Assembly (NCBI GenBank): GCA_964247055.1
Contig: OZ176051.1
Span: forward strand, 11,470,001 to 11,534,000
DNA from: Paragordius varius
Taxonomy: Eukaryota > Animalia > Nematomorpha
DNA length: 64,000 bases
Direction of reading: 5' to 3'
Shown: piece by piece, positions 33,682-61,176 of the stretch
Layout of the letters: each line of letters starts with the position of its first letter
Numbering within the stretch: the stretch's first letter is position 1
Position numbers and translations under genes: made by a program
The notes under the pieces: model-generated
Database searches by the model: none
Told to the model about the DNA's origin: nothing
The model's input: only the letters and a program-made list of their open reading frames with translations

Positions 33682-34133
33682 TTATCCCACGGTAGTGGCC
33701 GCCGTCGTAGTAGTCGTAGCCGTCGTAGTCGAGACCGTCGTGGTCGAAGCCGTTGTGGTTGTAACCGTCGTGCTACTTGTGGTAGACGCTGTTGTGGAGG
33801 CTGTAGTTGCTGTACTAACGGTTGAAATAGAGCTGCTGCTTGTTCCCCCCAAAATTGTTCCGCCTGATAAGACTGTAGTACTGGGCGTCGTTGTACTTAA
33901 TGTTGAGGTTTGTTTTGGAGCTCGACTCCTCCTGGATACGACGCGTGGTATGAAAGGAAGGCGTGTTCTAGAGTTTGGTTTGCGGGTTCTCTTAGTCCGT
34001 ACCGTCCGTCGAAATAAACGGGTTGTAGTTAATAATCGGGGTCTTCTGGCGCGGGAAGTAATCTGAGGCCCTCGGCAAAAAGGACGACATCTATAAGGAT
34101 TCTTTGGGCACCTACGAGCAATAGGCATGCATC
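33682..34133 (-). CDS. Secreted Cys/Arg-rich, Thr-tailed protein, paralog 1, exon 2 (gene 33682-34289, 175 aa)
   Basis: actatag| (R)CMPIARRCPKNPYRCRPFC...TRLFRRTVRTKRTR...Thr/Ser-rich tail, stop TAA at 33682-33684. Clear paralog at 60605. Confidence 0.85.
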
Positions 34134-34213
34134 CTATAGTAACATGCATAATTATTAAATTTAAGCTTTCAAAACGCTAAATAGTAAAAAAACTAGAGCT
34201 ATAATCAATATAC

Positions 34214-34289
34214 TTATTCTTTGGGCTTCGCTTGTCCACATCAAAAATACGGTTATAATAGTCGTTAAGAAAATTTTTGCGCACCACAT
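34214..34289 (-). CDS. Paralog 1, exon 1 (signal peptide)
   Basis: MWCAKIFLTTIITVFLMWTSEAQRI a|gtatat. An 80-bp phase-1 intron joins in frame to exon 2. Confidence 0.8.
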
Positions 34290-34340
34290 TTGTTAAGAAA
34301 TTAGTATAATTAAAAAAATAAAAAATATACTTGACTCACG

Positions 34341-34347
34341 CTTTATA
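34341..34347 (-). promoter_or_regulatory. Candidate TATA box (TATAAAG) for paralog 1
   Basis: About 55 nt upstream of the ATG at 34289. Confidence 0.45.
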
Positions 34348-34431
34348 TTGCACAACAAAATTATTATATAATATATTTTGGCTAACACAAATATTCTCCT
34401 CATTACCTTGATACAACTAGAATCTGAAACG

Positions 34432-34569
34432 ATGAAGATTACCAATATTTGTTTGTTAAATTTATATATTATTTATGCGTCAGGTCTGAAAGATAAAATA
34501 ATTCGACGAAGAAAGGTTTGCCATCACAAACAAAACTGTCAAAAAATCAAGGTTATATTCAATTTTTGA
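34432..34569 (+). CDS. Candidate small secreted cationic peptide, divergent from paralog 1
   Basis: MKITNICLLNLYIIYASG-LKDKIIRRRKVCHHKQNCQKIKVIFNF*. Weak signal peptide; possible donor aag|gttata at 34552. Confidence 0.3.
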   Translation: MKITNICLLNLYIIYASGLKDKIIRRRKVCHHKQNCQKIKVIFNF

Positions 34570-34749
34570 GCATATATTATAAATAAAATAACAAGGTTGT
34601 ATACCTTTCAGTTACACATAATTATTGTAAATATTGATATTATTTATTAACGATATTTATCCCAAGGATTGCAAGAGTTCAAATCTATTTTCGCATTGGG
34701 CAGGCGAGGTGCCATTTATCTTGATAATGTTTAAATTTTGATAGGATAG

Positions 34750-34905
34750 TTTGCTGCAAATGGTCGAAAAAGAATAAGGTGGATGGATTAAATATACTAA
34801 AAAAACCAATAGAATATTGGCAGAAACATCAAAACTAAAAATAGCAATCTATAGAGGAGTTTTATTTATAATGTTGAAAAAAGCCAACTTCGACTGTAAC
34901 ACATC
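34750..34905 (+). mobile_element. Short RTE 3'-end fragment
   Basis: Matches 28950-29065 plus 31848-31870 (gaataag.tgga.tgga, agttttattta, cgactgta.caca). Confidence 0.6.
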
Positions 34906-35286
34906 CTAAAACAAATTAATAATTTTATATTAAAACAAGTAGAAAGTATAAATTATAAAGCAAAAATAATTTTTTTTACATTCAATATAATGAAAAATTT
35001 AAAGGGTAAATTGTATCTGAAGCAACATGTATATTTCATTACTTTACTACAGAGGCAATATATTTTGTGATTTTAGTATCAATATTATATATTATACTAC
35101 TAGTACCAAACAACTTCATTCTAACCTAACAGTTTCATTCTACAAAAATCCGAAATCCGCATAATCCCATGTCAACTCTTATGAAAAAAACTATACACTA
35201 GAAACAATACAAAAATTAATATAAAAAAATTGAATTTAATATATTTAAAATATAACTATTCATTACCCCCAAGAAACTTATATTTT

Positions 35287-35470
35287 CAGTTTGCGTAAGT
35301 ATTTGGTAAAATTTCAATTATTGCCAAAAAGCATATACAACAAAGGGAAGTATTATTGGCTTATAGTTATTTTTTTTACTTTCCACTATTATCAGCCATA
35401 ATAACCTTTGCTGCATATGCCCTTTGGCAATAATCAATAACTTTCTAGCAATATATACTTACTCATACTG
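35287..35470. mobile_element. Hairpin MITE family H (CAGT...ACTG termini, Tc1/pogo-like)
   Basis: TIR CAGTTTGCGTAAGTAT vs ATACTTACTCATACTG (14/16 match); internal arms are palindromic; 184 bp. Confidence 0.7.
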
Positions 35471-36278
35471 TATATCAACAAATAAAGTCTTAATTTTTGG
35501 CACAGATGATTTTAATTCATTGAGTATTTTTTATGTTGCTAATATAAAGGGCTAAATTTATTTAAATTAGAGGATTATTTAAATCTATCCATTCTATTGA
35601 GCCAAAATTTGCAAATATTAAGTCATATTAATTATATTATATATTTATAATTTATCACCTATTATGCAAATATTGATTTTTTCCGATTATAACCATATAT
35701 GGTAAAAGGAATTTTCTTCTATATTTTCAATTTTTTAATCCTTGTATTTTTGATCAGATCTCACACCGGTCATATTGAGCTAGGTGTGATATCCTGAGGA
35801 AACTTTACCCCCAATTTCGCACAATGTGTATTATCTGCATAATCTAAAAGTAAAAAAGATTTTTAATAATTCACGCAATCAAATATTATATAAGTAGAAA
35901 CGGATTTTATAACTCTTTTTTACTTTTTCCATATTTTAAAACCAGTTAATTATTTAATTATACTAAGAGCGTTTTAAATAAAGCCCAACATTAATTGTAA
36001 TTTAATAAGGCAGAATTTGAATCTATTTATTTTTTCGCAAAAACCATTTTTGTCGGCTATGATTACGCTATATAAATTGATTCAGTGGAGTGTTTTTGAT
36101 TTTCCATTTCATATGATCATATAATAACCATTTAAAAAGGACTAAAATCATTCCCAATTTATTATTCAGCCCTACCCTCCTATGTGTAATTCTCAACATA
36201 CAAATGCTAATTTGGTCTCAATATAAACAGCACCGCCGGTCGCATTTTAAATTCAAAAAAGACTTCAATGCACTAGTT

Positions 36279-36489
36279 CAGGGCTTCTTAAACTAGGGGT
36301 CGCGACCTCATTTGGGGTCGCATAGTTAAATTATGGGGTCGCTACTGATAAAATACAATTTGACAAAAAATGTTTTTTTAACATATAAAATTATTGTTAT
36401 AAAGAAAATATCAATCATTGTAGATAAATATATCATAAAATTTCTGATTCGGAAAGACTTATATACCTGAATTTCTATTCCGATTACAA
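36279..36489 (+). mobile_element. hAT family B left end (one-ended)
   Basis: CAGGGCTTCTTAAACT plus GGGGTCGCGACC subterminal motifs; homologous to 56250; interrupted by a Helitron at 36490. Confidence 0.75.
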
Positions 36490-37890
36490 TCTATATATTT
36501 ATAAAATAAAAAATGCTGGCTTTGTCGGTTTCCGAAAACCGGTAGACCCATTCAAATCCAAATGTCAAAAAATATAATTAATAATGAATGCCTCGACAAT
36601 AGTTTCGCCCCTTTTTTGAATTAGGCTCCCAGTTTGATCCCACCCCGTGTAAAAAACGGTTTTTTTTGAAAACGTCCACAAAAATCGTGTCTTTAAGAAT
36701 TTTCCGGAAAACATGTTGAACCATTCGATTTCAAATATTTTTTTTACTTATTTCGATTGCGCCGAACAGAGTCGGCTCGCTTTTTTAATTTAGGCCCTCG
36801 TTTTACTCGCTCCCCCCGTAAAATGCCACTTTTTTCAAAAAAATTAAGTCCACAAAAATAGTTTTTTGAATCTATTTTTCGCTTAAAGTATGAGACCATA
36901 AAAATTCAATAAGAACTCCAGATATTCCCTGTTAAAAGGCAAAATAATTCGTGCGTTTCTTTTATGGTAGCTGCTTAGTAGGGAGATACCCGCTAAAAAC
37001 TAACCTGTCATATCGAATTGGGGCTAAATTTCAAAAAACCTCTCAGGCCATATGAGTTCAATAACTGCTTAAAATATTACCCGTAACAAGGCATATATTT
37101 TGATCGTGCGGTTTTTTAAAATTAGCCGTTAATTAGGTCCTTCACGTCCTGAAAAATGCGCCACCATAGAATAATTTTTTAATTGAGGCAATTTTTTCAA
37201 AAACTAATCATGCATATGGAATCAATCATGAATCCAGGTATTCTCCATAAAAAAGCAAAATTTTAATCAACCGCTTTTTTTGTATCAGCCTCTGGGTAGG
37301 GAGCTAAACGCCTAAAACTGCGCCACCATATCGATATTGCGTTGATTACGAGTTATTTTTCAGAATATCAGGCCACATAAGTTTCATAAAGACCTGAAAT
37401 ATTATCCGTAAAAAGGCGAAAATTTAAGTCGAGCGGTTTTTTTGAATTAGCCGTTGATTAGGCTTGCGCCTTAAAAAATGCGCTATCATTGAACTATTAT
37501 TTAGTTTTGAAGCCATTCTTCCATAAACTATAAAGAACATATTAAATGAATGATGATTCCAGGTATTCCCATAAATTTTTTTATCTAACTACATTTTTAT
37601 ATTGGCCTCTAGGTTGGGGGCTACCCGCCTACAACTGCGCCACCATATCGATACAGCGTGACTTTGGGGACAAATTTTAAAAAACATATCAGACCATATG
37701 AGTTCAATAAGGGCTTGAAATATTACCCGTAAAAGGCAAAATTTAAGTCGAGCGGTTTTATTAAATTACCCCTAGGCCCTTGCCCTGAAATATGCGCCAC
37801 CATAGAATGACTTTTTGGTTTTTAGGCAATTTTTCGAAAATCCCGAGAGAGCATATGGAATTGTTCATGATTCTAGGTATTACACTAAAT
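36490..37890 (+). mobile_element. Helitron family C, copy 4 (5' end intact, 3'-truncated)
   Basis: A|TCTATATATTTATAAAAT at 36489/36490; colinear with the other copies. Confidence 0.85.
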
Positions 37891-37919
37891 ATGGCCAAAA
37901 TTTGAATCACAGTCATAAA

Positions 37920-38603
37920 TAGGGTTGTATTGACCTGGTCATGACCCGGTCAGTGACTATTTTTTTTGACCATGGTCATTTAAAAGAAACAGCTGTTTTT
38001 TGAAAAATTGCTGGTAAACTTTTTTTGGAAGAGAAATAGTAAGATTTCAGTGTTTTTTAATAAGTTTTTTAAAATATAAATTAAATATTTAAATATGCTT
38101 ATTTAACAATATAAAATTGTTAAACACGCATCGTTATAACATTAGCATTTAAGCATATCCAGTTACTTCAACTAACAAAACAATCAAGCACTTTGCAAAA
38201 CATGCAATTATTCCATCACCAATAAAATAAGAAAACATCTTATATTTGGATATTAATTCATTGATGAAAGAAAGTGTAATTAGGTAAAATTTAATTTGAA
38301 ATATCCAGTATTAAAAGCTATGTATTTGAAGATTAAGAAGGCCACAAACACGTGGCAAAATGTGAAAACAAAATTCTTGGTTTGATTCATGATATTTGTA
38401 TATAATAAATATCAAAAAATGTATAATAAACTTTCAAGAAAAAACATGATATTATTGTGAAACGCTAGTGTCGTACAAACATTATTTTCAAAATCCAATA
38501 TGTGATATTTACTTAAGTAAAAAGTGGCCCTGACCGTGGTCATGAGCATAGTCTGTGGGTGTGACCGGACTTTTTTGAAAAAGCAGTCAAATGCACAACC
38601 CTA
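37920..38603 (+). mobile_element. hAT-type MITE family D, copy 1
   Basis: Termini TAGGGTTGT...ACAACCCTA with GGTCATGACC subterminal repeats. Reverse complement of 58690-59406. No TSD at this copy. Confidence 0.8.
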
Positions 38604-38724
38604 TTTAAACAAGGTTTTTCTATTGAATATAAAAAGGAGGTTGATACTCAAGCGTAACATTATTGCACACGCGTATTAAATAAACGATTGTAAAATCCCT
38701 ACGAAAGCATATATATATATATAT

Positions 38725-40740
38725 ACTGTGAGCAAAAAAAATTTGACAAAATATTTTTTTTTCATGAGATAGCTTATGACCAGCGTATTCATTCGCCGCA
38801 AGAATTTTTATTTGTTGACAACCTAGTTTTTGAAATATTGAGATCGAAATCGGGCAAAAAGTAAAAACTAAGGATTATTAAGGATATCAAAAAATAATGA
38901 TAAAATTTGAGATATTATGGTATATTATTTTTTTGGGATATATTTTTAATATATAAATAGCCTAAAATCATATATTTAGGGTTTCTAAAAATTTCAGCTC
39001 AAAAGCTGGCGTTTTTCTTTTAAGACACTTAAATAATAAAAAAATTTTAAAACTATATTAAAATAATTTTTTTAATTATTTATTACCTAACACTATTAGA
39101 ATCTTAAAATTCATATTTTATTTAGTAAAAAAAACTTATGTATTAAAATTGAACCAAAAATATTGTTTTTTATTCCCGCATTTTTTTGTCATCTGGTTAT
39201 GACTCTATAAAAAGTTTATACTGTTTTATTTTTAAATCTTACAAAAGTGGGAATTATTTAGTATATAATTCATGCAAAATAGGATTTAAAAGTAGTGGAA
39301 TATCAACTAACACTCCGTACAAATCCCAATAAAAATATTAATTTGTCTTAAAACAGACTTGTTACAGGTATTTGTAAAGATTGTTGGTTGATATTCCATT
39401 ACTTTTATATCCTATTTTCCATAAATTATATACTTTATAACTCCCACTCATGTAAGATTCCAAAAACAGTATAAACTTTTTATACTCTCATAAACCAGAT
39501 GACAAAAAATGCGAAAATAAAAAACAATATTTTTGGTTTAATTTTAAATAAGTTTTTTTACTGTATAAAATATATATGAGGATTTTAACAGAGTTTGGGT
39601 AGAAATAATTAAAAAAATTATTTTAATATAATTTCATTAAAAATTTTTGCATTTTAAGTGTCTAAAACGTCATTTTTTGAGCTGAAGTTTTATAGAAACC
39701 CTAACTATATGATTTTACGCTATTTATATATTGAAAATATATCCTAAAATGATAATAAACCATAATATCTCAAATTTTATCATTTTTTGAATTATACTTT
39801 ATCCTTAATTTTCACTTTTTGCCCGATTTCAATTTTCTCTCAATATTCAAAAACTAGGTTGTCAAAAAATAAAAACGCGGTAAATGAATACGCTGGTCAT
39901 AAGCTATCTCATTAAAAAAAATTTTTGTTAAATTTTTTTTTCATGAAATAGCTTCAATTTATGCTTGTTTACCACCTAGTTTTTGAAATATTGATAGAAA
40001 TTGGGCAAAAAACTAAGGATATTAGGGATAATTGGAAAAATGATTGTCCATATTAACACTTTATTAACAGCCTAAAATCATATATTAAGGTTTAAAAAAA
40101 CAAAAAATCGTGTTTTTTTAAACATACTTATTACAAATTTTTTTAAGAAATATATTAAAATATTTTTTTAACTATTTACTACTAAACTGATTATTATAAT
40201 CTTAACATATATATACAGTAAAAAAACTTATAATGAGAAATTTGCTGTTTTATTTTAGAATCTTACATGTTCGGAAATCACAAAATATAATACAAAATAG
40301 GATTTAAAAGTAGTGGAGTAGCAACCAAAACTTAGAAATCCCAGATAAATTTGTGTTAAATCAAACCTACAGGGATATTTACGGATTCTTAGTTGATATT
40401 TCTCTGTTTTTCATATATTTGTATTTACGATTCCCGTTCATGTACCAACAGTAAATTTTTTATGCATTCATAAACCAGAATGAAAAAATAAAAACAATAT
40501 TTTTTTAGTTTTATTTTGACACATAAGTTATTTTAATGTTAATATGAATGTAAGATTTAATTATTAATTTGACTGGTAAAAATCACAAAAATTATTTTTA
40601 TATACTTTCATAAGAAATTTTTGTGTATTAAGTATATTTAGAAAACACACAATTTTTTGACCTCAGTTTTTTTATAAAAACCTTAATTATATGATTTTAG
40701 GCAATTATAAATTGTAGATATCTGATAAAATGATAATTTA
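38725..40740. mobile_element. Two tandem foldback (long inverted repeat) units, family E
   Basis: Arm 38725-39330 is mirrored by 39365-39935. A second, more decayed palindrome spans 39935-40740, centred near 40355. Confidence 0.8.
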
Positions 40741-41649
40741 GATTCATATTGCATTCATATAGTATTGAGCATGGAATACTTATATTGTGATCATATTCAA
40801 CAAAAGTAAAAGTCAAAATCTTTGATAACTTGATATTGAAATTGATTTATAAAAATTGGACAAATGTATTTGTCAAGTTGTTTTTAATTAAATTTCTTTG
40901 AAAATATAACACGGCGTATAGAGCATATTTTACCAACTATACAAAAACGCAATTACATTTGTGTCACGATACCGCTATCTATATCCAATGTGTCAAGGAT
41001 AGGTTTCTCTCGTTTTGAAATTTCTTAGGCATACTCAGTACACTACGTTTTTGGATATTTTATTAAAACGTTCATATTTAAAAATACTGAACGTTTATAG
41101 TCTTTTAAAGATAAAATTTATTTAATTTATATTGCAGGACTTAGCATCAAAATAATATCGTTTCTTATTGATCAAAAGATGTTTGTTATCCAATTTCTTA
41201 ACAAAATAACACTAATTCAAATGCGTAATGAAATACATTGATAATATTATATTTATTTTCATGCTCCTCGTGTTTAAATAATAAGTAAATAGAATTTTAA
41301 AGCCTATTAATACATTTTAAAAATATTACAGGGTCCCTGAACGTCTGAAAAAGGCAGAATAAAATTATTAACGAACACAGGACGGAAGCTTTTAATGCTA
41401 TTTCATATAATGACTGCAAAAATGCAATATCAGAATATATATTTATTCATGGAGGTTATATGGGGAATATGGTTATTTGATTAATACTGAATTATATCCA
41501 CTATTTTACTATACTTTATAAATAATTATAAGAAATATTAATCTAAAAAATAATAATATTTTGCAATTTATTGTTAAAAATATTTTAAATATAAAATTAA
41601 CTATTTATATAATATTGTGAGACCATTTATTGGTTAAGGGTATTTTAAT

Positions 41650-41930
41650 GGAACCACAATATATACCATTATCAGTTAAATTCACCCTAAAATAAATTAT
41701 GTGTTTTTTAAGATCAAAAATTAGCTCTATTCCATATTATTTTCAAAATATGAAATTCTGTTTACAATAATATAATGCTGGAAAAATAATAAACTATGTC
41801 GTAAAAATATATTTCATATTAATGATAAGTTTATATTATCCCGAAAACACATAATTAATGTTTAGGGTGATTTTTTGTTCGAGGGTGAATTTAAATTGTT
41901 CAATAGTGAATTTGAATTGTAAATGGTAAA
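41650..41930. repeat. Inverted repeat, MITE-like
   Basis: tcaccctaaaataaattatgtgtttt (about 41681) versus aaaacacataattaatgtttagggtga (about 41845). Confidence 0.5.
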
Positions 41931-42774
41931 TATGGCTTTTTACAGTAATATTAAAATAAATAATCAGAATAATTTTTATTATATTGTCATTAGAATTATA
42001 TTGTATATATTATTGATATAAATATTAATGATTTTAAGAGGTGCACGGATAGTATATTGATTGCACTATGAGAATTGGATGATGAAGTTGAGGATCTTTT
42101 AACATTTTCTAGAAAAACAATAAAATAAATATTATAACAAATGAATGATTCAATAAGATAAAAACCAATTTTTTCCCTAATATAAAAACAATAAAACGGT
42201 TAGCTAATTAAGTTAAATTTGTTAATAAAGTATAAAAAAGTTAAAAAATAGCGAACATACCTTCAAACTAAAAGTGGTATAAGTAAAGTCTTTGAAAATA
42301 TAATAAATGAATAACATACGGTAGTTTGATTATATTAATTGTTTAAGTATTTTTACTTCTAAAAATAAATTTATTTAACTATATACGCTGTCAATGCATT
42401 TCCGTAATGCCTTATTTTCCTGGTAATTCGAATAAATAAAAAAATGATTTTATGAAAATACATATGGACAAATGTTTAAGCTCCAAAATTTTATCAAACG
42501 AACCTTATAATGAAGGGTATATAGTTTTACTTAGATTAGAATTTTCTGATATTACTCTCCAATATATACATACAGAATCCTCCATAAAAAGTATAGTAAT
42601 TTAAATTTCAAGCTTAAATAAAAAAAAGTAGTGTATGGAAATTAAATTGTAATAAAAATTTGGGTAATAAGTAAAATATGAGCCAAATTAAATTTAGCAG
42701 ATATATAAATATTATTCCAAACAACATTGCATCAAATAACGCAATAGAGCTGATTTGGATTGATAATACATATA

Positions 42775-42890
42775 ATTATGTGTAAGTACACATTGCTACT
42801 TTTTAATTAATTGCCAGATATTCAGCAAAGGAAATTATAGTATCTGGCATATTTAATAAAAAAACTAGCAATGTATACTTTTTTCACCGT
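42775..42890. mobile_element. Hairpin MITE family H, internally deleted copy
   Basis: gtaagtacacattgcta...ttgccagata / tatctggca...tagcaatgtatactt. Confidence 0.55.
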
Positions 42891-44293: not shown

Positions 44294-44509
44294 CTAAAAT
44301 ATTAAGTGGTGTGCATATATAAAAGCGTATGAAAAGTCTTTTTTACAGTTTTAAGTTTTAATTAAAAGGCTGGATATATTTTTAAAGCTGTTTTTAAAAA
44401 TTATTTCGAGATATCCTTTGCAAAAAAATTTAATAACATAACTGGTGCGTTATTCAAATTTTTTAACAGCATTTGATACTTAAAAATTCTAATTAATTTT
44501 AATTTCTCA

Positions 44510-51257: not shown

Positions 51258-51281
51258 GTATATATATATATATATATATAT
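51258..51281. repeat. (TA)n microsatellite
   Basis: TA run. Confidence 0.9.
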
Positions 51282-51497
51282 AACTGTTTTGGAAACAAAA
51301 GAAAAAATTCGACACCAAGCGACATCTTCAAAGAAAATATAATATATATTAATAGTAGAATTATGAATTTATCTTTGACCATTTATCCTTACAAAATGAC
51401 CATCGAATTATTCAAAAAATGGGATTTCTATCAAAAGAATTATGGAATAATCTTTAACATTATGTATTCTGAGCTTTAATTTGGTTATGGAATGTAT

Positions 51498-51537
51498 ACA
51501 TATATATATATATATTTATATATATATATATATATAT
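51498..51537. repeat. Interrupted (TA)n microsatellite
   Basis: TA run with one interruption. Confidence 0.9.
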
Positions 51538-53959
51538 AACAATAATATTATTCGTGTCATGGCAAATTCAATTTTGTGGTCTTTGTTTAAGATTTACTCA
51601 TAATTTTTTATTTCGACCTAATCTAATCAGTCTCATTAATTATATTAAATTCGACATAATTATGAGATAATTTATAAATTTTATTAAAATATTCGATTAG
51701 TTTTCCTTTAAAATGTCTTTAAAACTTGTTTAAATAAATCTTAAATATCGTTATAGGTAATGCGTTAAGGATTATTAATTCTGTAAATAAAGGTAAAATT
51801 AAAATATCTAACCCGAAATCTCCAGATAAACTTTTGAATTCCACATCATTTCATAAAAATTTAGTGTAACAAATTCAAATAACACTATTCTGTATTTTTA
51901 AAGGAAATATTTAGAAATTAATAAATTGATAAAGATGTAATATTTTGTGTTTAAACAATTTTCGTAATATAGCCATTTGTCTCAATAAATCATATACGGC
52001 TATTTAACTATTGTGGCGTTAATTATTTGCACGCATTATATATATATATAATGAAATTTAATGATATTTTAATGTATTAATATATATGAATACTAGTTTG
52101 ATTTCAATATATTTTCTTTTATTGCACAAACAATTAAAAACTTGGATAATATCTGATAATATAATATAATAATTTTATGTATAAGGCAGAAAGATATTTG
52201 GCGCACGTTAATTTTATTAAAAGGGATATTTTCATATATAATTAATTCATATTGATTGATTATTAATTATGAACGACTTGAAATATATTTTTCGATGCCT
52301 CATAAATTTAATTTTAAATATAATTTGTTTTTCAGTAACGGAATCGTATAACCTTACTATTTATGTGGTTTTTTTTGTTAAAATAATAATTTTCAAGATT
52401 TTATTTGGTTGTAAAACAAGAATGCAGTTTGATTGTCTTGAAGTAGACTTGTCAAATTTTCATATTTTTTTACTGCAATGAATTCTATGCAACGCATATC
52501 TTATTAAAATTAAATTATACTATCTATAGTGATGACAAAAAATTATTTATATTTTTTATTTTTTTATGACGCAAACAATAAGACTTATTTCCTGTTAAAT
52601 TTGTTAAATCACTATTTGGTTGTTAGTTACATCATGCACAAGGCCACTCAAAAGTAAGTTTTTTTTTCTTTTAAACCAGTTAGAAAACACCTTAAAGTCT
52701 TCATTTATGACTGGGAAAAAATAAATATGAAATAAGAAAAAATTATTTTAATCATATTATTATACAAATTATAATAAGTTATTTAGCATGGCATTTTGAC
52801 ATATTGTGTAGACAAAATTTGTGTGTGTAATTTACATAAATTTAATTAAATTCTACCAAATTTAGGTTGATAAAAGAATAAAAATTTTTTTTTAAACTAT
52901 TAAATATTTAAATTAAAGCATCTTAAATATCTTTACAATATGTTAGCATTAAATAAAATCATTTATGGTATTTTATTAAAGGGTTCATCGCAAATATGTT
53001 CCCCCAAAAAAGGGTGGACATAAGAATAAGATGGGTGGATTACAATATTGTGCATTTTTTAGGAAATAAAACCACAATAATATACTGCATAATTTTAAAG
53101 TTTATGATTATTTCATCAGATGAAAAATTAAAATACAGAGTTAGAATTTGGTAATCATTGTTCCATAAAACAGTTTAAGGGGGCGTTCCATAAGTTATTT
53201 TAAAAAACACCATAATACTCATGGCATAATTAAAATATAATGGTATTATTTTGGGTTATAAATGGTTTTCACCCAAAAAAATTTAAAAAGTTAAAGGGCA
53301 CCTAGAAAAATTTTTATATTTTTAGGAATCGTTCATAATTTCGACTAATTAATAAATTTTATTTTTTGCCGGTAACGGTATCTGAAACTAACCTTTATTA
53401 ATTGATTCATAAATAAATTATAAAGAGATATTAGAAAGTTTTTGGCCTCGTTTTCCGAAGTGTTTTCAAGACACCATTTTACACTTTGAACGTAAATCCA
53501 CAAACTTAATTAAAACAAAACCTTTCAAAAGGCTGATTATTAAAAATAAGCTCCAGCTTAATTTTGTAAATATTGTTGCCTTATCGTCCTGAATCAATAT
53601 TAAATTTGTTAAATAATAATTAATGGATCCAATTTTGTTGTTTTTTTATTAGTTTTGTTCTATCAATAACAATCAAGTTTGACATTTAAAGAGGTCGATA
53701 ACAAAAAATTGATTAAATTGTAAACGACAGAAAAATATCCTGATGATATATATCTTTTGCTAGGCATCAAAATTATCAATTTTCTTTTGATTTTGGCCCT
53801 TGAAAGTGATTTGAGAAAATTATTTACACTTTTTGGATAGTATTCCACATAAAATGGCATTGCGCATTTTTTAATAAATTTTTATGGTAAAAGCTTATTC
53901 TTTCCAAAAAAATATTACTAAAATAAATTATAAACCACATATAAAAAGCAAGATAATAT

Positions 53960-54400
53960 TTTTTACGCTTAAAAAATTGTCAAAAATTAAATTTTTGGAA
54001 AAAGGTATCCATTTAAATATTAGTTGATATTAAAATTTAGCATACATTTAATTTTTTCACGCACGGCATTTTTGTGTTTATTTTAAAAGAACTAGCCCAT
54101 TAGAAGAGCAAAAATATTTGGGACTTTCGCAGTCGTCCATATCTGAATTTTTTTAAAAATATTGTTTTGGTCTTTATATGTAGTTTAGGATATATTTTAT
54201 AATATTTTTAGGAATGAAGCATTTACCATAAAATTTGCTTAACAATATGTGCCCAGATGCCATTTTCTGATATTGATCACTTGCCAAAAAAGTGTAAATA
54301 AGTTTCCTAAACCACTCGTAAGGCCAAAACTAAAAGAACCATGATAATCCTAATACATTTTCATATTAGAATATATATATTTAATAAGAATATTTTTTAT
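53960..54400 (+). repeat. Family F copy
   Basis: Same blocks as 31880-32340. Confidence 0.7.
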
Positions 54401-55348
54401 ACCACCGATTTCGGACGTAGTGTATTTTAAAGTGAATATTTTTAAAATGACTTTGTTTATATATTTTTATGCCAACTTTATTATTTTACCCCTGTAAGCG
54501 GAACAAGTATCAAGGGAAAGGCAAAACCATCTTAACACAAAATTTGGACTGCATACTTAAAATTTTTAACTGGTAGTGATTTTTTAAATAATAAAAACAA
54601 CCACGGTTTCAATCCTAAAACGGTAATTTTGGTCGGATCAAATATTTTTCAATGATAATTGAGAAGGCTTTTGATCCTTAAAAATTATAATATCGCAAAA
54701 ATACTTTAAAGTTGCATATTCTTAGGAAATTATGACGATAAAACCCATACTTTTGCCATTTAATGCTATAAGATTTAGGTATAATACTATGTCAGATAGG
54801 CAACTTCTGATTAATTACAATTACGACTTATCTCTAACAATTACAAAATAAAAAATTATCCTGAGACCATTCTTCCTTACCAACACCTTTGAGACATTTT
54901 TAATGGATTATTGTAGTTTTCATCGGGGTTTATTAAAAATTGGCATTGTTGCACCAAATTAAAATGTTTCAAAATTTTAACGAATCACGCAATAAATCAT
55001 AGCGATTATGTTATTTAGGTATTATTTAATTATATTTTTCTAATACGATGCCTTACATTGGTAAAAACTTATTGTCATTTAGATTTGTCCTTGATTTTAC
55101 TTGTAGTTTAGAATAATTGATTAATCTAATATTAATGCTTGTTTGAGTTTATCATAAATTGAATTATTTTATCAAATCAAGATAAGTATTAAGTGTTTTA
55201 GCGTTAGATTTGTTAATGTGCGTGCACATTGAGGACTCGACCCATATACCAATGAATAAACGAATCAAACCCTTATATCTTGGGTAGGATGTGATTTAAA
55301 CTTCACCACAGAGACTGGTTCTTAATGTTCATAATTAACCAATTTTAC

Positions 55349-55433
55349 CATAGTAATTAACACAAATGGCTTCACAATCCGATTTTTTGATCCAAAAAAT
55401 TAGGCCCAAGATAAAAATAATTGCCAGTATCAT
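55349..55433 (-). CDS. Candidate signal-peptide first exon, possibly of the Dpr-like gene
   Basis: MILAIIFILGLIFWIKKSDCEAICVNYY g|gtaaaa. Phase 1 is compatible with the phase-1 acceptor at 46577. Confidence 0.3.
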
Positions 55434-56197
55434 CGATCGATTTTTAATTATGTTTATTATTCCAAAAAATTAGTTGAACAATTTTATTAACTTTTGAGTC
55501 AAAGCCTCACATTACTGTAATTTTTGGCTTAATCTCCGTTGAATTAAAAAAAGTTTTTGATTAACAAAACTTTGTTTTCAGCGAAAGCCAATTAATATGC
55601 TTTTCGCTGGCCCATTTTAATTTTTAAACTTTTTCTATCAAGTTTAAGGATATTCTAAGGCCATAATATAATAGCTTTTATTATATTAAACTATAATTAA
55701 AAAATTTAATTAAATTTTAATTCTTAATTGGGGGCCTTCAATATCGCAATGAGACTCTCAATAGGATCCAAGCAAAAACGCTGAAATTGGCTCGATAATA
55801 TTTTTTTATGCTATATTTAGTCATTAACAATTTATTTTTATAAAAGAGAGTTTTTCTAATTAATTATTAAAATTTTGTTCAACCGTTAAAATGGTTTTTT
55901 GAAGCATGGTGGAAACGGTAAAACACTCAAAAATATTATAAAAGGCTTCTATATGAGCTCGATGATGCTGAATATTTATATAGCTTATTTAATAAAAAAC
56001 CGGTTTTACTTCAAATATAAATGTTAGTGAAATACAGTGGCGTACCGAGCATTTGCGGCGCCCGGGGCATAAAACTTCTATGGCGCCCCCCCCCCCCCTC
56101 CCCTTTTTTTTAAAAGCCAATAATACAATTTAGTAAAAAAATACAAACGTTGAACCTTAACACCATAGATAAGACAGCACAGTCATATAAATTTTAA

Positions 56198-56202
<5 letters not shown>

Positions 56203-56249
<47 letters not shown>
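56203..56249. repeat. (TA)n microsatellite merged with the hAT-B left TSD
   Basis: Pure TA run ending at the TIR. Confidence 0.95.
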
Positions 56250-56252
<3 letters not shown>

Positions 56253-58108
56253 GGCTTCTTAAACTATGGGTCGCGACCCCAAATGGGGTCGCGAGTGATA
56301 AAATTAAAATTTAACAAAAAATGTTTTTTAACTTGTAAAATCTATATGTTTATAAAAATGGAAAATGCGGCTTTGTATGTTTCCGGAAAACCGGTAGACC
56401 CATTGATATCCAAATGTCGAAAAAATATAATCAATAATGAATGCCCCGACAATAGCTGCGTCTTTTTTTGAATTAGGCCCCCAGTTCAAGCCCACGTGTA
56501 AAAAACGGTTTTTTTTGAAAAATCGTGTCTTTGAGACAATTTTCCTGAAAACGTGTTGGATTATTCGATTTCACATATATTTTTTTACTTATTTTGCGCC
56601 GAACATAGGCTCGCTTTTTTAATTTCCACCCCCTTTTTACCCGCTCCCCCCGTAAAATGCCATTTTTTCAAAAAATTTGTCCACTAAAATAATTTTTTGA
56701 ATCTATTTTTCGCCCAAGGTACGAGACTCTAAGGATCCCAGGTATTCCCTGTTAAAAGGCATATATTTTAGTTTTTTATATTGGCTGCTGTGTAAATAGA
56801 TACCCGCCAAAAATTGCCCCATCATAAGAAGATAGCGCGCCCTTGTGGTTAAATTTCAAAAAACCTATCAGGCCATATCAATAAAAAATATTACCAATAA
56901 CAGGGCAATAATTTAGGTCGTACGAATTTTTATTCACGCCCTGAAAAATACGCCACTATACAATGATTTTTTAGTTATAAGGCAATTTTTCCAAAACCTA
57001 ATGAGAGCATATGGAATCAATAATGATTCCAGGTATTCTCCGTAAAAACGCAAAAATTTCAATCAAGCGTTTTTTTGTATCAGCTTTTGGGTTAGGAGCT
57101 ACTTGCCTAAAACTGCGCCACCATATCGATACAGCGTGACTTTGGAGGCAAATGTTAGAAAACTTATCAAGCCATATGGGTTCAATAAGGGCTTGAAATA
57201 TTACCTAAAAAAAGCAAAAATTTGAGTAGAGCGGTTTTATTAAATTACCCTTAATTAAACCCTTTCCCTGAAAAAATGCGCCACCATAGAATGACTTTTT
57301 GGTTTTGGGGCACCAGGAGGGCATATGGAATCAATCATGATTCCAGGTATTGCCCGAATTAAGGCAAAAATTTTAATTAAGCGTTTTTTTTTCGCCTCTG
57401 GTTAGAGGCTACCCGCGTAAAACTGCGTCCAATCTCGATACAGCAAGCCAAATTTCAGAAAACCTATGAGTCTAATAGGAACATTGAATTCCACGATAAT
57501 TCCAGATAATCCCCATATGAGGGCAAAAATTTCAACCAGCGCTTTTTTATACCTGCCCTAGGTTAGGAGTACCCTCCACAAACTGCTCCACTATATAGAA
57601 ATTGCTTGATTTGGAGCTAATTTACAGAAAATTTAAAAGGCATATGAGCTCATTACCTTGAAATATTATCCGTAACTAAATAAAAAATCAGGCGTTTTTT
57701 ATAGCAGTTAATTTGTGGCTTTTATGCCCTAAAAGTACGCCATCTTTTAACAATAATTTAGTGTTGAGGTATTTTTTCGAAACTCCATAAATGTCAAAGA
57801 TGATTCCAAATATTTGTCAATAAGAAGCCATACGAGTTCAGTTAAACACATTTCTGGGGAATTTGTAGAATATCATTCTTTCCTTCAAAAAGGCCACCGA
57901 TCAATAACTTGTATAACTTTACTATGAATCAGAAGATGTTAAAGAAATTTATAAAAATGTAAATTTATGTTTGTAAATCTCTTAAAACCGAAATAATCCT
58001 GATAAATATTATCAACAAAATTTATAAGCGTTTTTCGAATTGTTGGGGTCGTTAAGAAACTCGATATCATAAATGGGGTAGGGAATTACAAAAGTTTAAA
58101 AAGCCCTG
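56250..58108 (+). mobile_element. hAT family B, complete copy
   Basis: TIR CAGGGCTTCTTAAACT / AGTTTAAAAAGCCCTG. TSD ATATATAT / ATCTATAT (7/8 match). Confidence 0.85.
56341..57900 (+). mobile_element. Helitron family C, copy 5 (inside hAT-B)
   Basis: A|TCTATATGTTTATAAAAATG at 56340/56341; 3'-truncated. Confidence 0.85.
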
Positions 58109-58177
58109 ATCTATATGATAGTAAATTTATTCCTTTTTGAATGCATAAATATTCTAATAAATTCTATAATATAGAAA

Positions 58178-59481
58178 TCTATATAATTATAAAAATGGAA
58201 AATGGTGGCTTTGTGATCTGTTTCCGAAAAACCGGTAGACCCAATCAAATCCAAACATCGAAAAAATATAATCATTAATAAATGCCCCGACAATAGCTTC
58301 GCCCTTTTTTGAAATAGGCCCCCAGTTCGGGCACACCCCGTGTAAAAAACGGTTTTCTTTGAAAACAGAAGTCTACAAAAATCGTGTCTTTGAGACAATC
58401 TTCCGGAGAACGTGTTGAAACATATTTCAAATGTGATTTTCGTTTACCATTTTCGATTGCGCCGAAAATGGTCGTCTCTGTTTTTTAATTTAGGCCCTAT
58501 ATTTACTTGCTCCCCCCATAAAATGCCATTTTTTTCAAAAAAACAAAGTCCACAAAAATAATTTATTAAATCTGTTTTTCGCCCTAGGTGTGAGATCGTT
58601 TGGCCCAAGTAAACAATATATTAGTATGGATGCACCGTTTTAAAATTTAATGAGATCATAGCTAAATAATGTTTTGAAATACTTTCAACTAGGGTTGTGC
58701 ATTTGACTGCTTTTTCAAAAAAGTCCGGTCAGACCCGGTCAGACCATAGTCATGACCACGGTCATGACCACTTTTTACTTAAGTTACCATTCGATATTGG
58801 ATTGCAAAAATAATGTTAGAACGACACTTGCATTTTATTATTAATATCACATTTTTCCTTAAAAGTTTGTATTATACTTTCTAATATTTATTATTTACGA
58901 ATATATTTAATCAAATTTAATCAAGAATTTTGTTTTCAAATAAATTTTGGCACATGTTTGTGGCTTTATGAATACATAGCTTTTACTTGATTTTTTGAAT
59001 AAAATTTTACCTAGTTTGTTTTACATTTTCTTTTATCATTGGAATATCCAATTACAAAATGTTTTTTCATTTTATTGGTTCACACATATGGAAGAATTGG
59101 ATATTTTGCGAAGTGCCTGATTGTTTTGTTTTTCGCAATGACTGGATAAAATGTTAATGTTATAAGGATGCATGTTAAACAATTTTATATTTTTAAATAA
59201 GGAAATTTCAATAATTAATCTATATTTTTTAAAATATATATCAAAAAATAATATAATCTTAGTATCTCTATTCCAAAGAAAATTTACCAGCAATTTTTCA
59301 GAAAACAGCTGTTATTTTAAATGACCATGGTCAAAAAATAAATAGTCACTGACCAAGTCATGACCCGTTCACTTGACTGGGTCATGACTTGGTCAGCACA
59401 ACCCTACTTTTAACGCTCCCCTCCCACCCGGAAGTCCGAAGGACTTCCTCGGGTTGCTTAGCAGCCCGAGATTTTCGCTAG
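58178..59481 (+). mobile_element. Helitron family C 5' end joined to a different 3' terminus (copy 6)
   Basis: A|TCTATATAATTATAAAAATG at 58178. About 410 bp of family C, then unrelated sequence, two GC hairpins and CTAG|T at 59478-59482. Confidence 0.7.
58690..59406 (-). mobile_element. hAT-type MITE family D, copy 2
   Basis: Perfect 11-bp TIR TAGGGTTGTGC / GCACAACCCTA. TSD CTTTCAAC / CTTTTAAC (7/8 match). Confidence 0.88.
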
Positions 59482-60604
59482 TTATATATAAAAATAATGT
59501 TTTTGTTGCATATATTGAATTGATCTTATGATAATGGCAAACAATAATGATTTAAAAAATAATTGTAAATCTAGAAGAATTTTACAATACTTAAACAGAA
59601 TTATAATGCATTTTATTTAATAAAATATTAATTATATGAAGATTTTATCACTTGGAAAGGAAAAAAGCAACCTAGAGAAAAATATCTTTTATGTAAAAAT
59701 TTTTCTGGCTTTTGATATTGCAAAATTATCAATTATATTATAAAAATCTATCATATTTTTCTTTTTCCACTCTCAACAATGTTAAGTCATTCTGTATGGT
59801 ACTAATTAAATGAATAATATAGATATATTTTAGGGATTATTACTCAATTGCTGAAAAATCTCATTTGAAAGTTCTTATTATTTTTGGATAATTAAAATTT
59901 AATTTTAAAAAATCATTTAGGCGCCCCTAAATAACGGCGCCCGGGGCATGATGCACCCCCTTGCCCCCCCGTCGGTACCTGGTGAAATACTGTAAGTTAA
60001 ATGCCAATAATAAATTCTGAGGTAAAGAAAATGTTCTGCATTATCGAATTATGGAGATAAAGTACTTTTTAACGTTTTCATATTGAATATAAAATGCGAT
60101 TTAACGAAATTGTCTGAAATTTATTGCCAAGTATATTTCCAAACTTATATTGATCTTATAATGCAAATAAAGAATTAAGAACGAAAAGGACAGTGAAAAT
60201 GATACATTCTCGTAATTTTAAATTTTTTATAAGGATACATATTATGGCCCACGATTTTTTTGACTGTGTTACAATCGATAGACTTATAAATATATTAAAA
60301 ACTATTTGTGTTTATATTTTAAAAATATTAGAGTTTATTAGGATAATTTTAGGTTATTACAAAACATAATCAATCCGTCATTTACCATTAAGTTTTAATA
60401 AATTTATGGATGTATACATAATTTATAATGAAATTGAGACAATATCAGTTTTCAGGACAAAAAACCATTTAATTAATAAAATTATTTAAAAACACTTTAG
60501 TATGTGCAACTATATAAAGAATATAATTTAGGATGATATATGAACAGTAATTTGTAAAGTGTCAGCACAAATTAATGGTAAAATAATTCCTAAATATATC
60601 ATGG

Positions 60605-60966
60605 TCATGGTGTTGTGATTGGAGAAAACAATACTGTGGTCCTTCTTCTTATGCCAGTGGATAAGGTACTCATCATAGAAGAAGGAATCATAGATGATAG
60701 GGTACTTAATGGAGGAAAAGGCCTAACCCTTGACACTCTTGGTGAAAATAGTATACGAGTTCGACCTCTAATTCTAGGTACTCGAGTCCGTTTGGTCCTA
60801 ACCGTCCGTGTGAATAGGCGGCGGGTTGTTAAGCGCCTCCTCCTTCTTGTATGTGCATTTCGCCTTACATCAAATCCTCGAATGCTTATAGTGGGTGCAG
60901 TTACAGAACAGTTTGGTCTACAACGATAAGGGTGCCCACGACATCGCAGTTCAACGGGAAAACATT
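60605..60966 (-). CDS. Secreted Cys/Arg-rich protein, paralog 2, exon 2 (gene 60605-61176, 142 aa)
   Basis: aaaatag| (K)CFPVELRCRGHPYRCRPNC...LTTRRLFTRTVRTKRTR...Ser/Thr tail, stop TGA at 60605-60607. Confidence 0.85.
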
Positions 60967-61109
60967 CTATTTTGAACAAAGGGAACAGTCATATATATAT
61001 ATTATATATATATATATATAAGGATAAATTGGTCAATAGTAAAAATTAATAACATGGGGTTTTTTGAGTATGGCTTATTTTTTTGTGAAATATTTTATTA
61101 GCATTTTAC

Positions 61110-61176
61110 TTGCTTTTTGGGATTCACCTGTCCAAATGATTGAAAATGAAAGCAATATTAAGTATAAAAGATTCAT
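61110..61176 (-). CDS. Paralog 2, exon 1 (signal peptide)
   Basis: MNLLYLILLSFSIIWTGESQKA a|gtaaaa. The 143-bp phase-1 intron is at the same position as in paralog 1. Confidence 0.8.

What the first reader, a model, noticed from the sequence alone, without database searches (positions are those of the whole stretch)
33682..61176. Unrecognised family of secreted, highly cationic 4-Cys proteins with mucin-like tails (two paralogs 27 kb apart)
Seen: both genes are on the minus strand and have a signal-peptide exon ending WT(S/G)E(A/S)Q with a phase-1 intron at the same place. Both then have C-x-P-x4-C-x3-PYRCRP-x-C (C-x6-C-x6-C-x3-C), an Arg-rich block sharing LTTxRLFxRTVRTKRTR, and a Thr/Ser tail. 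By hand count paralog 1 has about 23 Arg and no Asp or Glu after the signal peptide; paralog 2 has about 28 Arg and 2 acidic residues. Conserved Cys and motif against divergent linkers and tails suggests selection on the protein. I do not recognise the family. Inference: antimicrobial or host-interaction effectors (loosely like Arg/Pro-plus-Cys peptides such as arasins, but in a different domain order), or adhesive, cuticle or egg-coat components.
Basis: partly seen in the sequence, partly recalled or inferred. Interest (0 to 1): 0.8.

Follow-up and report, generated by a model that had tools for sequence, protein, structure and literature searches.

The report
Orphan secreted arginine-rich four-cysteine protein family
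The two genes are real, and at least one is spliced and expressed; they belong to a nine-gene family, seen so far only in this AT-rich (probably horsehair-worm) genome, of secreted proteins with a tiny four-cysteine cap, an acid-free arginine-rich block and usually a Ser/Thr-rich tail, whose function is still only inferred.

Summary
Both minus-strand genes have a signal-peptide exon, a phase-1 intron one codon before the first Cys, and a second exon. That exon encodes C-x6-C-x6-C-x3-C, an acid-free Arg-rich block and a Ser/Thr tail, which is long in paralog 1 and short and poor in paralog 2.

- **Family size:** the genome holds nine members with the same gene structure. Eight have net charge +20 to +31; one couples the Cys cap to an acidic/His-rich tail.
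- **Expression:** an RNA-like run holds a contig with paralog 1's 80-nt intron removed exactly as predicted. DNA of the same sample keeps the intron.
- **Selection:** where dS is unsaturated, dN/dS of the cationic domain is 0.07-0.44.
- **Relatives:** none found by Pfam, the word search, an exhaustive profile search of 1.84 billion proteins, PDB sequences, the ESM Atlas or Foldseek.
- **Structure:** AlphaFold gives a small ordered cap (pLDDT about 80) and a disordered remainder.
- **New detail:** a conserved Gln sits at the likely mature N-terminus, and five of nine genes end in Gly-stop.

Function is inferred only. I favour a polyanion-binding defence-type peptide (about 0.35) over a surface-coat or adhesive glycoprotein (about 0.3).

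The parts
34214..34289 (-). Paralog 1 exon 1: start codon at 34289, 25-codon signal peptide (K at position 5, 11-residue hydrophobic core, S-E-A then Q) plus the first base of the junction codon
   Evidence: Its 3' part (34228-34274, plus the 11 allelic letters up to the junction) lies in the spliced contig of run X4 (record 28).
34134..34213 (-). Paralog 1 intron, 80 nt, GT..AG, phase 1
   Evidence: X4 record 28 joins the exon 1 end directly to 34133. The 11 'between' letters are the exon 1 end carrying this sample's own allele (a 3-nt deletion and A>G at 34216). Both changes are also seen in unspliced DNA contigs of run X3 from the same sample.
34075..34131 (-). Paralog 1 four-cysteine cap (19 aa, C-x6-C-x6-C-x3-C, with invariant P3, P12, P17 and Y/F13)
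   Evidence: invariant columns; pLDDT about 80 for residues 1-20.
33919..34074 (-). Paralog 1 acid-free Arg-rich block. With the 19-aa cap it forms a 71-aa domain with 21 Arg, 3 Lys and no Asp or Glu. It includes the LTTTRLFRRTVRTKRT and RTRLPFIPRV motifs.
   Evidence: purifying selection; pLDDT 50-55, no secondary structure.
33685..33918 (-). Paralog 1 Ser/Thr/Ala-rich tail (78 aa, 36 Thr and 16 Ser), ending in Gly
   Evidence: (imperfect 15/30-nt repeats).
33682..33684 (-). Paralog 1 stop codon (TAA)
34342..34347 (-). TATAAA box 58 nt upstream of the paralog 1 start codon (candidate core promoter). A matching TATAAA aligns in the closest paralog on C2 at 13.549 Mb.
   Evidence: Inference only.
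34605..34804 (-). Alternative upstream non-coding exon spliced (GT..AG) to the exon 2 acceptor, skipping the signal-peptide exon. Low depth.
   Evidence: X4 record 29, joint 34132/3 to 34604/5, only 21 letters on the exon 2 side. (stop codons in the exon).
61110..61176 (-). Paralog 2 exon 1: start codon at 61176, 22-codon signal peptide plus one base
60967..61109 (-). Paralog 2 intron, 143 nt, GT..AG, phase 1, containing a (TA)n run
   Evidence: The position and phase match paralog 1 and the other seven genes. There is no RNA evidence for this copy.
60908..60964 (-). Paralog 2 four-cysteine cap
   Evidence: E 1.7e-14.
60713..60907 (-). Paralog 2 Arg-rich block. With the cap it forms an 84-aa domain with 25 Arg, 1 Asp and 1 Glu.
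60605..60712 (-). Paralog 2 short tail (35 aa, 15 Ser/Thr, 3 Arg, ends in Pro) and stop codon
   Evidence: no Ser/Thr-rich continuation in any frame.

Best explanation
These are two of nine genes of a taxon-restricted family of small secreted proteins.

Shown:
- Each gene has a signal-peptide exon, a phase-1 intron and one large exon.
- Paralog 1 is transcribed and spliced as modelled.
- The cap plus Arg block evolves under purifying selection.
- No relatives are detectable elsewhere.

Inferred build of the mature protein:
- Signal peptidase cuts after the conserved E-(A/S), leaving an N-terminal Gln that could cyclise.
- A 19-residue cap follows, stapled by two disulfides and stiffened by three invariant prolines.
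- Next comes a disordered block of about 55-90 residues with 20-27 Arg and essentially no acidic residue. It includes a period-3 R-T-x pattern and Pro/Arg motifs such as RxPFxPRV.
- In most members the protein ends in a 70-80-residue Ser/Thr/Ala tail, likely O-glycosylated. Five of nine members end in Gly, the substrate signal for C-terminal amidation.

Most likely mechanism (inferred): the acid-free guanidinium-rich block binds phosphate- or sulphate-rich polyanions. I favour microbial envelopes or nucleic acids, making this a host-defence (antimicrobial-type) peptide family released from secretory cells. The cap and the blocked termini would protect against exopeptidases. The glycosylated tail would keep the polycation soluble.
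For: - Gene structure and family.
- Splicing and expression of paralog 1. A contig of X4, which covers only exons and repeats, joins exon 1 to 34133 and carries the allele seen in unspliced X3 DNA of the same sample.
- Selection: (C6a/C6b dN/dS 0.12 at dS 0.47; P1/C6 0.08-0.11; P1/C2c 0.44).
- Composition: (net +20 to +31, at most 2 acidic residues, Arg far more than Lys).
- Order and disorder.
- No known family.
- Features typical of processed bioactive or defence peptides (my knowledge of gomesin, tachyplesin and the Pro/Arg-rich O-glycosylated insect peptides): conserved Gln at the predicted mature N-terminus, Gly-stop in 5 of 9 despite unalignable tails, four Cys within 19 residues, Arg rather than Lys, local tandem duplication, and amino-acid-changing allelic variation (4 nonsynonymous, 0 synonymous, plus an in-frame 3-nt deletion).
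- At least one copper type II monooxygenase gene is present.
Against: - No activity, tissue or stage data exist.
- A 70-80-residue Ser/Thr tail is unusual for antimicrobial peptides and typical of coat or matrix glycoproteins.
- The conserved part is the mature domain, not only the signal or pro-region as in many fast-evolving defence peptides.
- One member (C4) carries the same cap on an acidic/His-rich tail, so the cap has a role independent of charge.
- Amidation machinery is not proven: the PHM N-terminal domain was not found, and cannot tell PHM from dopamine or tyramine beta-hydroxylase.
- Signal peptides and O-glycosylation were judged by eye and hydropathy only, not with SignalP or NetOGlyc.
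- Paralog 2's expression is untested.
Confidence: 0.35

Rival explanations
1. Surface-coat, matrix or adhesive glycoprotein. The polyarginine block anchors the protein electrostatically to an anionic surface, such as the epicuticle, egg-string jelly or a mating or sperm mass. The Cys cap cross-links or docks it. The O-glycosylated Ser/Thr tail forms a hydrated brush.
For: Long Ser/Thr/Ala tails, including (AST)n arrays in the C6 tandem pair. The cap, block and tail are modular: the order is changed in C6c and the tail is replaced in C4. The conserved domain is under purifying selection. Earlier unchecked notes report many mucin-like genes in this genome and an unrelated family with a Cys domain, mucin stalk and acid-free polybasic tail (s1-243131). 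This parallels nematode surface-coat mucins, which have a signal peptide, a Ser/Thr region and a small Cys domain (my knowledge of Toxocara TES-120/MUC).
Against: The tails lack the Pro typical of mucin PTS regions. Paralog 2 and C2c have short tails or none. Gly-stop and a conserved N-terminal Gln are hallmarks of processed peptides rather than matrix proteins. Arg-only cations are unusual in known bioadhesives, which use Lys. No ShK/SXC or other matrix domain was found.
Confidence: 0.3
2. Parasite effector or reproductive protein. A secreted, cell-penetrating Arg-rich protein acts on insect host cells during the parasitic stage, or a seminal or egg-associated protein acts between the sexes.
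For: Arg-rich tracts of this density are cell-penetrating and resemble nuclear-localisation signals (general knowledge). The family is lineage-restricted, tandemly duplicated and varies between individuals at the amino-acid level. The genome is probably that of a parasite (and earlier notes).
Against: There are no stage-specific data. The one RNA-like run is of unknown stage. The paralogs show purifying rather than diversifying selection in the Arg block.
Confidence: 0.15
3. Prohormone or neuropeptide-type precursor, cut at the many basic sites (for example the conserved R-T-(K/R)-R) into small peptides, with the terminal Gly amidated.
For: An R-x-(K/R)-R site is conserved at the same alignment position in most members. 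Five of nine end in Gly-stop. There is a signal peptide.
Against: In a block that is about 30% Arg, such sites are expected by chance. Cleavage would mince the conserved block into fragments of 2-10 residues. No Gly precedes any internal basic site. Nine paralogs with mucin-like tails do not fit known neuropeptide genes.
Confidence: 0.05
4. Sperm nuclear basic protein (protamine-like), or non-functional open frames.
For: The composition is Arg-rich, Cys-containing and acid-free, like protamines.
Against: All nine have a hydrophobic signal-peptide exon. Splicing is shown. dN/dS is below 1. All nine exon-2 frames are open; only C2c has lost its Ser/Thr tail through a frame change.
Confidence: 0.03

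Closest known systems
Two-disulfide cationic hairpin peptides of arthropods (gomesin, tachyplesin/polyphemusin, androctonin)
   Same: Secreted. Four Cys within about 20 residues. Arg-rich. Termini often blocked (pyroglutamate in gomesin, C-terminal amide in tachyplesin and gomesin). Here Gln is conserved at the predicted N-terminus and 5 of 9 genes end in Gly.
   Different: The Cys spacing is 6-6-3, against 3-5/4-5/3. Three invariant prolines lie inside the motif. AlphaFold shows no beta-hairpin. The motif is only the cap of a protein of about 125-190 residues that also has a long Arg block and a Ser/Thr tail. There is no sequence similarity. The comparison is from memory.
Chimeric crustacean peptides with a Pro/Arg-rich and a Cys-rich domain (arasins, penaeidins)
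   Same: A secreted cationic protein that combines a Pro/Arg-rich stretch with a small disulfide domain.
   Different: The order is reversed: here the Cys domain comes first. Here there are 4 Cys in 19 residues, and a Ser/Thr tail is added. No Pfam hit was obtained, Penaeidin included.
Nematode surface-coat mucins (Toxocara TES-120/MUC family)
   Same: Signal peptide, a Ser/Thr-rich region likely to be O-glycosylated, and a small cysteine module. Multigene and parasite-restricted.
   Different: Those carry six-Cys ShK/SXC domains and are not polycationic. No ShK match here. Here a block of net +20 to +31 lies between the cap and the tail.
O-glycosylated Pro/Arg-rich insect peptides (drosocin, pyrrhocoricin) and mammalian Bac7/PR-39
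   Same: Motifs of Arg, Pro and a hydrophobic residue (RxPFxPRV here), and Thr residues that could be glycosylated.
   Different: Those are peptides of 19-60 residues without Cys. No homology. Resemblance from memory only.
Protamines / sperm nuclear basic proteins
   Same: Extreme Arg content, few or no acidic residues, and Cys present.
   Different: Protamines have no signal peptide and no Ser/Thr tail. All nine genes here begin with a signal-peptide exon.

Membership tests
Any Pfam-A family (including Penaeidin, ShK, defensin-type, mucin-associated domains) | Score above the curated gathering threshold | tested here: not met
   The best hit was Herpes_capsid at 14 bits against a cut-off of 25, a compositional match. 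Paralog 2 had no hit.
Two-disulfide beta-hairpin antimicrobial peptides (tachyplesin/gomesin/androctonin type) | Four Cys spaced about 3-5/4-5/3 in a peptide of 17-25 residues that folds as an antiparallel hairpin | tested here: not met
   The spacing is 6-6-3 in all nine. The model shows no paired strands. The motif is part of a much longer protein.
Two-disulfide beta-hairpin antimicrobial peptides (tachyplesin/gomesin/androctonin type) | Antimicrobial activity and membrane or LPS binding | not testable with these tools
   Needs synthetic peptide assays.
Arasin/penaeidin-type chimeric peptides | N-terminal Pro/Arg-rich domain followed by a C-terminal Cys domain | tested here: not met
   The order here is Cys cap, then Arg block, then tail.
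Secreted protein (classical pathway) | N-terminal signal peptide: basic n-region, hydrophobic core of 10-13 residues, small residues at -3 and -1 | tested here: met
   All nine exon 1 products have a maximum Kyte-Doolittle mean over 11 residues of 2.6-3.5 and S/G/N/T/I-E-(A/S/T) before a conserved Gln. SignalP was not available, so the cleavage site is inferred.
Mucin-like (O-glycosylated) protein | Long Ser/Thr(/Pro)-rich region that is actually O-glycosylated | tested here: inconclusive
   Composition is met in six of nine. Counted tails: paralog 1 67%, C6a 61%, C6b 59% and C10a 62% Ser+Thr; C10b and C6c were judged from their sequences. It is weak in paralog 2 (43% of 35 residues). It is lost by a frame change in C2c and absent in C4. 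The tails are Pro-poor. Glycosylation is not testable here.
Amidated secretory peptides | C-terminal Gly before the stop codon (or before a basic site), and PAM/PHM in the genome | tested here: inconclusive
   Gly-stop occurs in 5 of 9. PF01082 was not found. PF03712 was found at several loci but is shared with other monooxygenases.
Protamine / sperm nuclear basic proteins | Nuclear protein without a signal peptide | tested here: not met
   A signal-peptide exon is present in all nine. The spliced transcript contains it.
Nematode surface-coat mucins (TES-120/MUC) | ShK/SXC six-cysteine domains flanking a Ser/Thr-rich region | tested here: not met
   No ShK hit. Only four Cys are present, with different spacing.

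The most novel reading that the evidence does not exclude
A phylum-restricted class of completely acid-free 'polyarginine-glycan' secreted proteins: disulfide-capped, with both termini blocked. The parasite would use them as a cell-penetrating or surface-masking agent inside its insect host, either as a polycationic anchor carrying a glycan brush that hides the worm from haemocytes, or as an effector that enters host cells. This would be a new molecular solution for parasite-host interaction, with the 19-residue cap as a new mini-fold.
Probability: 0.1. Interest if true: 0.75.

Novelty: new variant of a known kind. Interest (0 to 1): 0.45.

Why it matters
Horsehair worms are among the least studied animal phyla, and nothing is known of their secreted defence, coat or host-interaction molecules. 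This is an expressed, selected, nine-gene family with no detectable relatives and an extreme composition: 20-28 Arg, almost no acidic residues, a proline-stiffened four-Cys cap, a Ser/Thr tail and possibly blocked termini. It gives a concrete, cheaply testable candidate. The 19-residue cap and the cap-plus-Arg block can be synthesised and assayed. The family can serve as a marker in stage-specific expression studies. If active, it would add a new scaffold to the cationic host-defence peptides. If structural, it would point to electrostatic anchoring as a design principle of the worm's surface or egg matrix.

Tried and rejected
- **Pfam**: only sub-threshold compositional hits.
- **Word-index protein searches**: exon 2 of paralog 1, residues 1-85, and the divergent C4 member. 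Nothing at E <= 1.
- **Exhaustive profile search** of 1.84 billion representatives with the six-member domain alignment: 0 hits at E <= 0.001. These small two-exon genes may simply be unannotated in other hairworm assemblies, so this does not prove absence from related species.
- **Structure and look-alike libraries**: PDB sequence profile, ESM Atlas and Foldseek against PDB with the AlphaFold model all gave nothing. The model has only about 20 confident residues, so the fold search has little power.
- **Literature**: nothing on such proteins in Nematomorpha, and the species was not identified.
- **PHM N-terminal domain**: no hit, uninformative in a genome with tiny exons.
- **Earlier findings by sequence**: blank.
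- **Antisense Val-rich frame** 33668-34066 (+): rejected as the mirror of the Thr-rich tail.
- **Protamine reading**: rejected because of the signal peptides.
- **Allele dN/dS** (4 nonsynonymous, 0 synonymous): too few sites to call positive selection.
- All searches used exon 2 or parts of it by reference. The two exons were concatenated once, inside the script, only to number codons for four SNPs; nothing joined was printed, saved or searched.
Full report
**1. What is in the sequence**

The window is AT-rich (23-36% G+C). It lies at C2:11470001-11534000 of a 110.6-Mb, 44-contig assembly. Reading the minus strand gives two small two-exon genes.

- Paralog 1: exon 1 at 34289..34214, intron at 34213..34134 (80 nt, GT..AG), exon 2 at 34133..33682.
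- Paralog 2: exon 1 at 61176..61110, intron at 61109..60967 (143 nt, GT..AG), exon 2 at 60966..60605.

In both, exon 1 encodes a typical signal peptide that ends W-T-(S/G)-E-(A/S)-Q-(R/K)-x, followed by one base of the next codon (phase 1). The first Cys is the first complete codon of exon 2.

Exon 2 begins with C-x-P-x4-C-x3-PYRCRP-x-C. It continues with an Arg-rich block containing LTT(T/R)RLF(R/T)RTVRTKRTR and RTR(L/I)(P/L)F(I/S)PRV, and ends in a Ser/Thr-rich tail.

Counts by script:
- Paralog 1 exon 2 has 21 Arg, 4 Lys and no Asp or Glu. Its 78-residue tail has 52 Ser/Thr.
- Paralog 2 has 28 Arg, 1 Lys, 1 Asp and 1 Glu. Its tail is only 35 residues, with 15 Ser/Thr and 3 Arg.

The signal exon runs two codons past the Gln. 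The 'mucin-like tail' is weak in paralog 2.

**2. It is a nine-member family, not a pair**

A six-frame search of the whole assembly was run with exon 2, then with a profile of the conserved domain, then with a profile of the 29-residue cap region alone. These found nine loci and no more:

| Contig | Position | Name used here | Note |
|---|---|---|---|
| C2 | 11.504 Mb | paralog 1 | in the window |
| C2 | 11.531 Mb | paralog 2 | in the window |
| C2 | 13.549 Mb | C2c | |
| C6 | 2.9057 and 2.9110 Mb | C6b and C6a | tandem pair with (AST)n tails |
| C6 | 3.0678 Mb | C6c | Arg/Thr block lies inside the Ser/Thr region |
| C10 | 2.9081 and 2.9160 Mb | C10b and C10a | |
| C4 | 7.2563 Mb | C4 | same cap, tail is acidic/His-rich, net -4 |

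All nine have a hydrophobic signal exon and a phase-1 intron one codon before the first Cys. A degenerate DNA pattern for the end of the signal exon occurs six times in 110 Mb, each time at a family gene, and never in the reversed control.

Invariant residues are C1, P3, C8, P12, C15, P17 and C19, with Y/F at position 13 and usually (V/I)TAPT after the cap. Eight members have net charge +20 to +31 and at most two acidic residues.

- The residue after the predicted signal cleavage, E-(A/S/T) then Q, is a conserved Gln in eight genes.
- Five genes (paralog 1, C6a, C6b, C10a, C6c) end in Gly-stop although their tails cannot be aligned.

**3. Is it expressed and spliced?**

One run search and one read-laying run were allowed. 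Four runs of one study hold the locus.
- X1 and X2 (sample S1) match the reference.
- X3 and X4 (sample S2) are a diverged individual.

X4 has only 24 Mb of contigs. Within the stretch it covers only exon sequence and repeats, as a transcriptome would, although its type is not on record.

X4's record 28 matches 34274-34228, then has 11 letters, then matches 34133-33943. Those 11 letters are exactly the end of exon 1 carrying sample S2's own allele: a 3-nt in-frame deletion at 34225 and A>G at 34216. Both changes are seen independently in X3, whose contig (record 22) runs unspliced through the intron. The 80-nt intron 34213-34134 is therefore removed precisely as modelled, in RNA and not in DNA of the same sample.

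A second, weaker X4 contig (record 29, depth 2.8 against 8.3) joins an upstream exon (34605-34804) to the same acceptor with GT..AG ends. It skips the signal exon. That exon contains stop codons, so it is a non-coding alternative leader of unknown meaning.

Paralog 2 could not be examined.

**4. Selection**

Nei-Gojobori estimates on the codon-aligned cap-plus-Arg domain:

| Pair | dN | dS | dN/dS |
|---|---|---|---|
| C6a / C6b | 0.056 | 0.47 | 0.12 |
| Paralog 1 / C6a, C6b | 0.15-0.16 | 1.4-1.9 | 0.08-0.11 |
| Paralog 1 / C2c | 0.195 | 0.44 | 0.44 |
| Paralog 1 / paralog 2 | 0.38 | saturated | - |

The domain is therefore under purifying selection.

C2c has the highest ratio. It has also lost its tail: a recognisable Ser/Thr tail, homologous to that of paralog 1, continues in another reading frame downstream. 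C2c is thus a truncated or decaying copy.

Between the two individuals, paralog 1 differs by four coding SNPs, all amino-acid-changing (V14L, I25T, Q49R, R53P), plus the in-frame deletion. There are 3 SNPs in the 80-nt intron. The numbers are too small for a test.

**5. Relatives and fold**

No Pfam family was found. The word-indexed 5.8-billion-protein collection gave no hit for paralog 1 or for the C4 member. HMMER with the family profile over 1.84 billion representatives gave none at E <= 0.001. PDB sequences and the ESM Atlas also gave none.

AlphaFold2 with the nine-sequence alignment gives pLDDT of about 80 for residues 1-20 and 50-55 for the rest, with no secondary structure. That is a small ordered disulfide cap followed by an intrinsically disordered polycation. 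Foldseek against the PDB found nothing, as expected for so small an ordered part.

Small two-exon genes like these are easily missed by annotation. The negative result therefore means 'no annotated relative', not 'absent from other hairworms'.

**6. Whose genome?**

Earlier notes of this scan call it a probable horsehair worm. I checked this only partly. The mitochondrial contig (C44, COX1 at E 5e-122) carries long, perfect or near-perfect palindromes with no spacer. The earlier follow-up (s1-252886) says this trait was published for that phylum. I treat 'hairworm' as likely but not established.

**7. How it probably works**

Shown:
- The build is secretory.
- The cap is ordered and the Arg block is disordered, acid-free and conserved.
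- The tail is variable.
- Paralog 1 is expressed.

Inferred:
- Cleavage occurs before the conserved Gln.
- Two intramolecular disulfides form.
- The tail is O-glycosylated.
- Amidation may occur where the gene ends in Gly. A copper type II monooxygenase C-domain is present in the genome, but PHM itself is unproven.

The chemistry common to every reading is multivalent binding of guanidinium groups to phosphate or sulphate polyanions.

I rank a defence-type (antimicrobial-like) role first, at about 0.35. The supporting features are Arg rather than Lys, four Cys in 19 residues, signals for blocked termini, Pro/Arg motifs, tandem duplication and amino-acid-level polymorphism. This combination is typical of processed host-defence peptides.

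A coat, matrix or adhesive glycoprotein is a close second, at about 0.3. It is favoured by the long Ser/Thr tails, by the modularity of cap, block and tail, and by unchecked notes of other mucin-plus-polybasic genes in this genome.

A host-directed or reproductive effector (0.15), a prohormone (0.05) and a protamine-like or non-functional reading (0.03) follow.

**8. Comparison with known systems**

It works like a cationic, disulfide-stabilised secreted peptide, but it is a member of none of the families considered.
- The Cys spacing and prolines differ from the tachyplesin, gomesin and androctonin hairpins.
- The domain order is the reverse of arasins and penaeidins.
- It lacks the ShK domains of nematode coat mucins.
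- Its signal peptide excludes protamines.

I therefore class it as a new family within a known kind: taxon-restricted secreted cationic Cys-peptides or glycoproteins.

**9. Verdict**

Interest is moderate (0.45). It is a well-defined orphan family with extreme composition in a neglected phylum, and it is directly testable. Orphan secreted cationic families are, however, common in animals, and no mechanism is yet shown.

I could not establish whether they belong to this family.

Noticed in passing
window 34605-34804 (-), joined to 34133: A low-depth contig of the RNA-like run splices an upstream non-coding exon (it contains stop codons) to the exon 2 acceptor with GT..AG ends, skipping the signal-peptide exon. 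It is either an alternative promoter or transcriptional noise next to a high-copy repeat at 34825-34905.
   Followed up: partly
L004:1150-1560 (-), i.e. G000:C2 about 13.549 Mb: The closest paralog of paralog 1 has lost its Ser/Thr tail. A tail clearly homologous to paralog 1's continues in a different reading frame downstream, so the open frame ends after 33 unrelated residues. Its domain also has the highest dN/dS (0.44). It is a truncated or decaying copy.
   Followed up: partly
L016:1168-1596 (-), i.e. G000:C4 about 7.256 Mb: A ninth member has the same signal exon, phase-1 intron and four-Cys cap, but its tail is acidic and His-rich (net -4, two extra Cys). The cap is therefore a module used independently of the polycation.
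   Followed up: partly
window 34290-34640 (-) and L004:1910-2259 (-): Paralog 1 and C2c share an upstream block of about 30 nt (TTTGTGAT.GCAAACC...GTCGAAT, about 250 nt before the ATG) and a TATAAA box about 60 nt before the ATG. These are candidate shared cis-elements.
   Followed up: partly
window 33575-33863: Run X2, from the same sample as the reference-like X1, holds a variant contig with 9 differences and a 1-nt gap across the 3' end of paralog 1. By my hand reading of the codons (not computed by a tool) these are one Val-to-Leu and two synonymous changes in the last codons, with the terminal Gly kept. It is probably the second haplotype.
   Followed up: no
window 32962-33123 and 34825-34905: Very high summed contig depth (thousands against about 240), so high-copy repeat fragments flank paralog 1.
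   Followed up: no
window 33668-34066 (+): A 132-aa Val-rich open frame lies antisense to the Thr-rich tail. It is a mirror-image artefact of the ACN-rich coding strand, not a gene.
   Followed up: yes
L017 (G000:C44:5980-10320): The mitochondrial contig contains spacer-less palindromes of 39-131 nt per arm and a tandem array of 49-nt hairpin units upstream of COX1.
   Followed up: partly
window 60985-61025 (-): A (TA)n microsatellite lies inside paralog 2's intron just upstream of the acceptor. A similar (TA)n run sits in the long intron of the C10a member.
   Followed up: no
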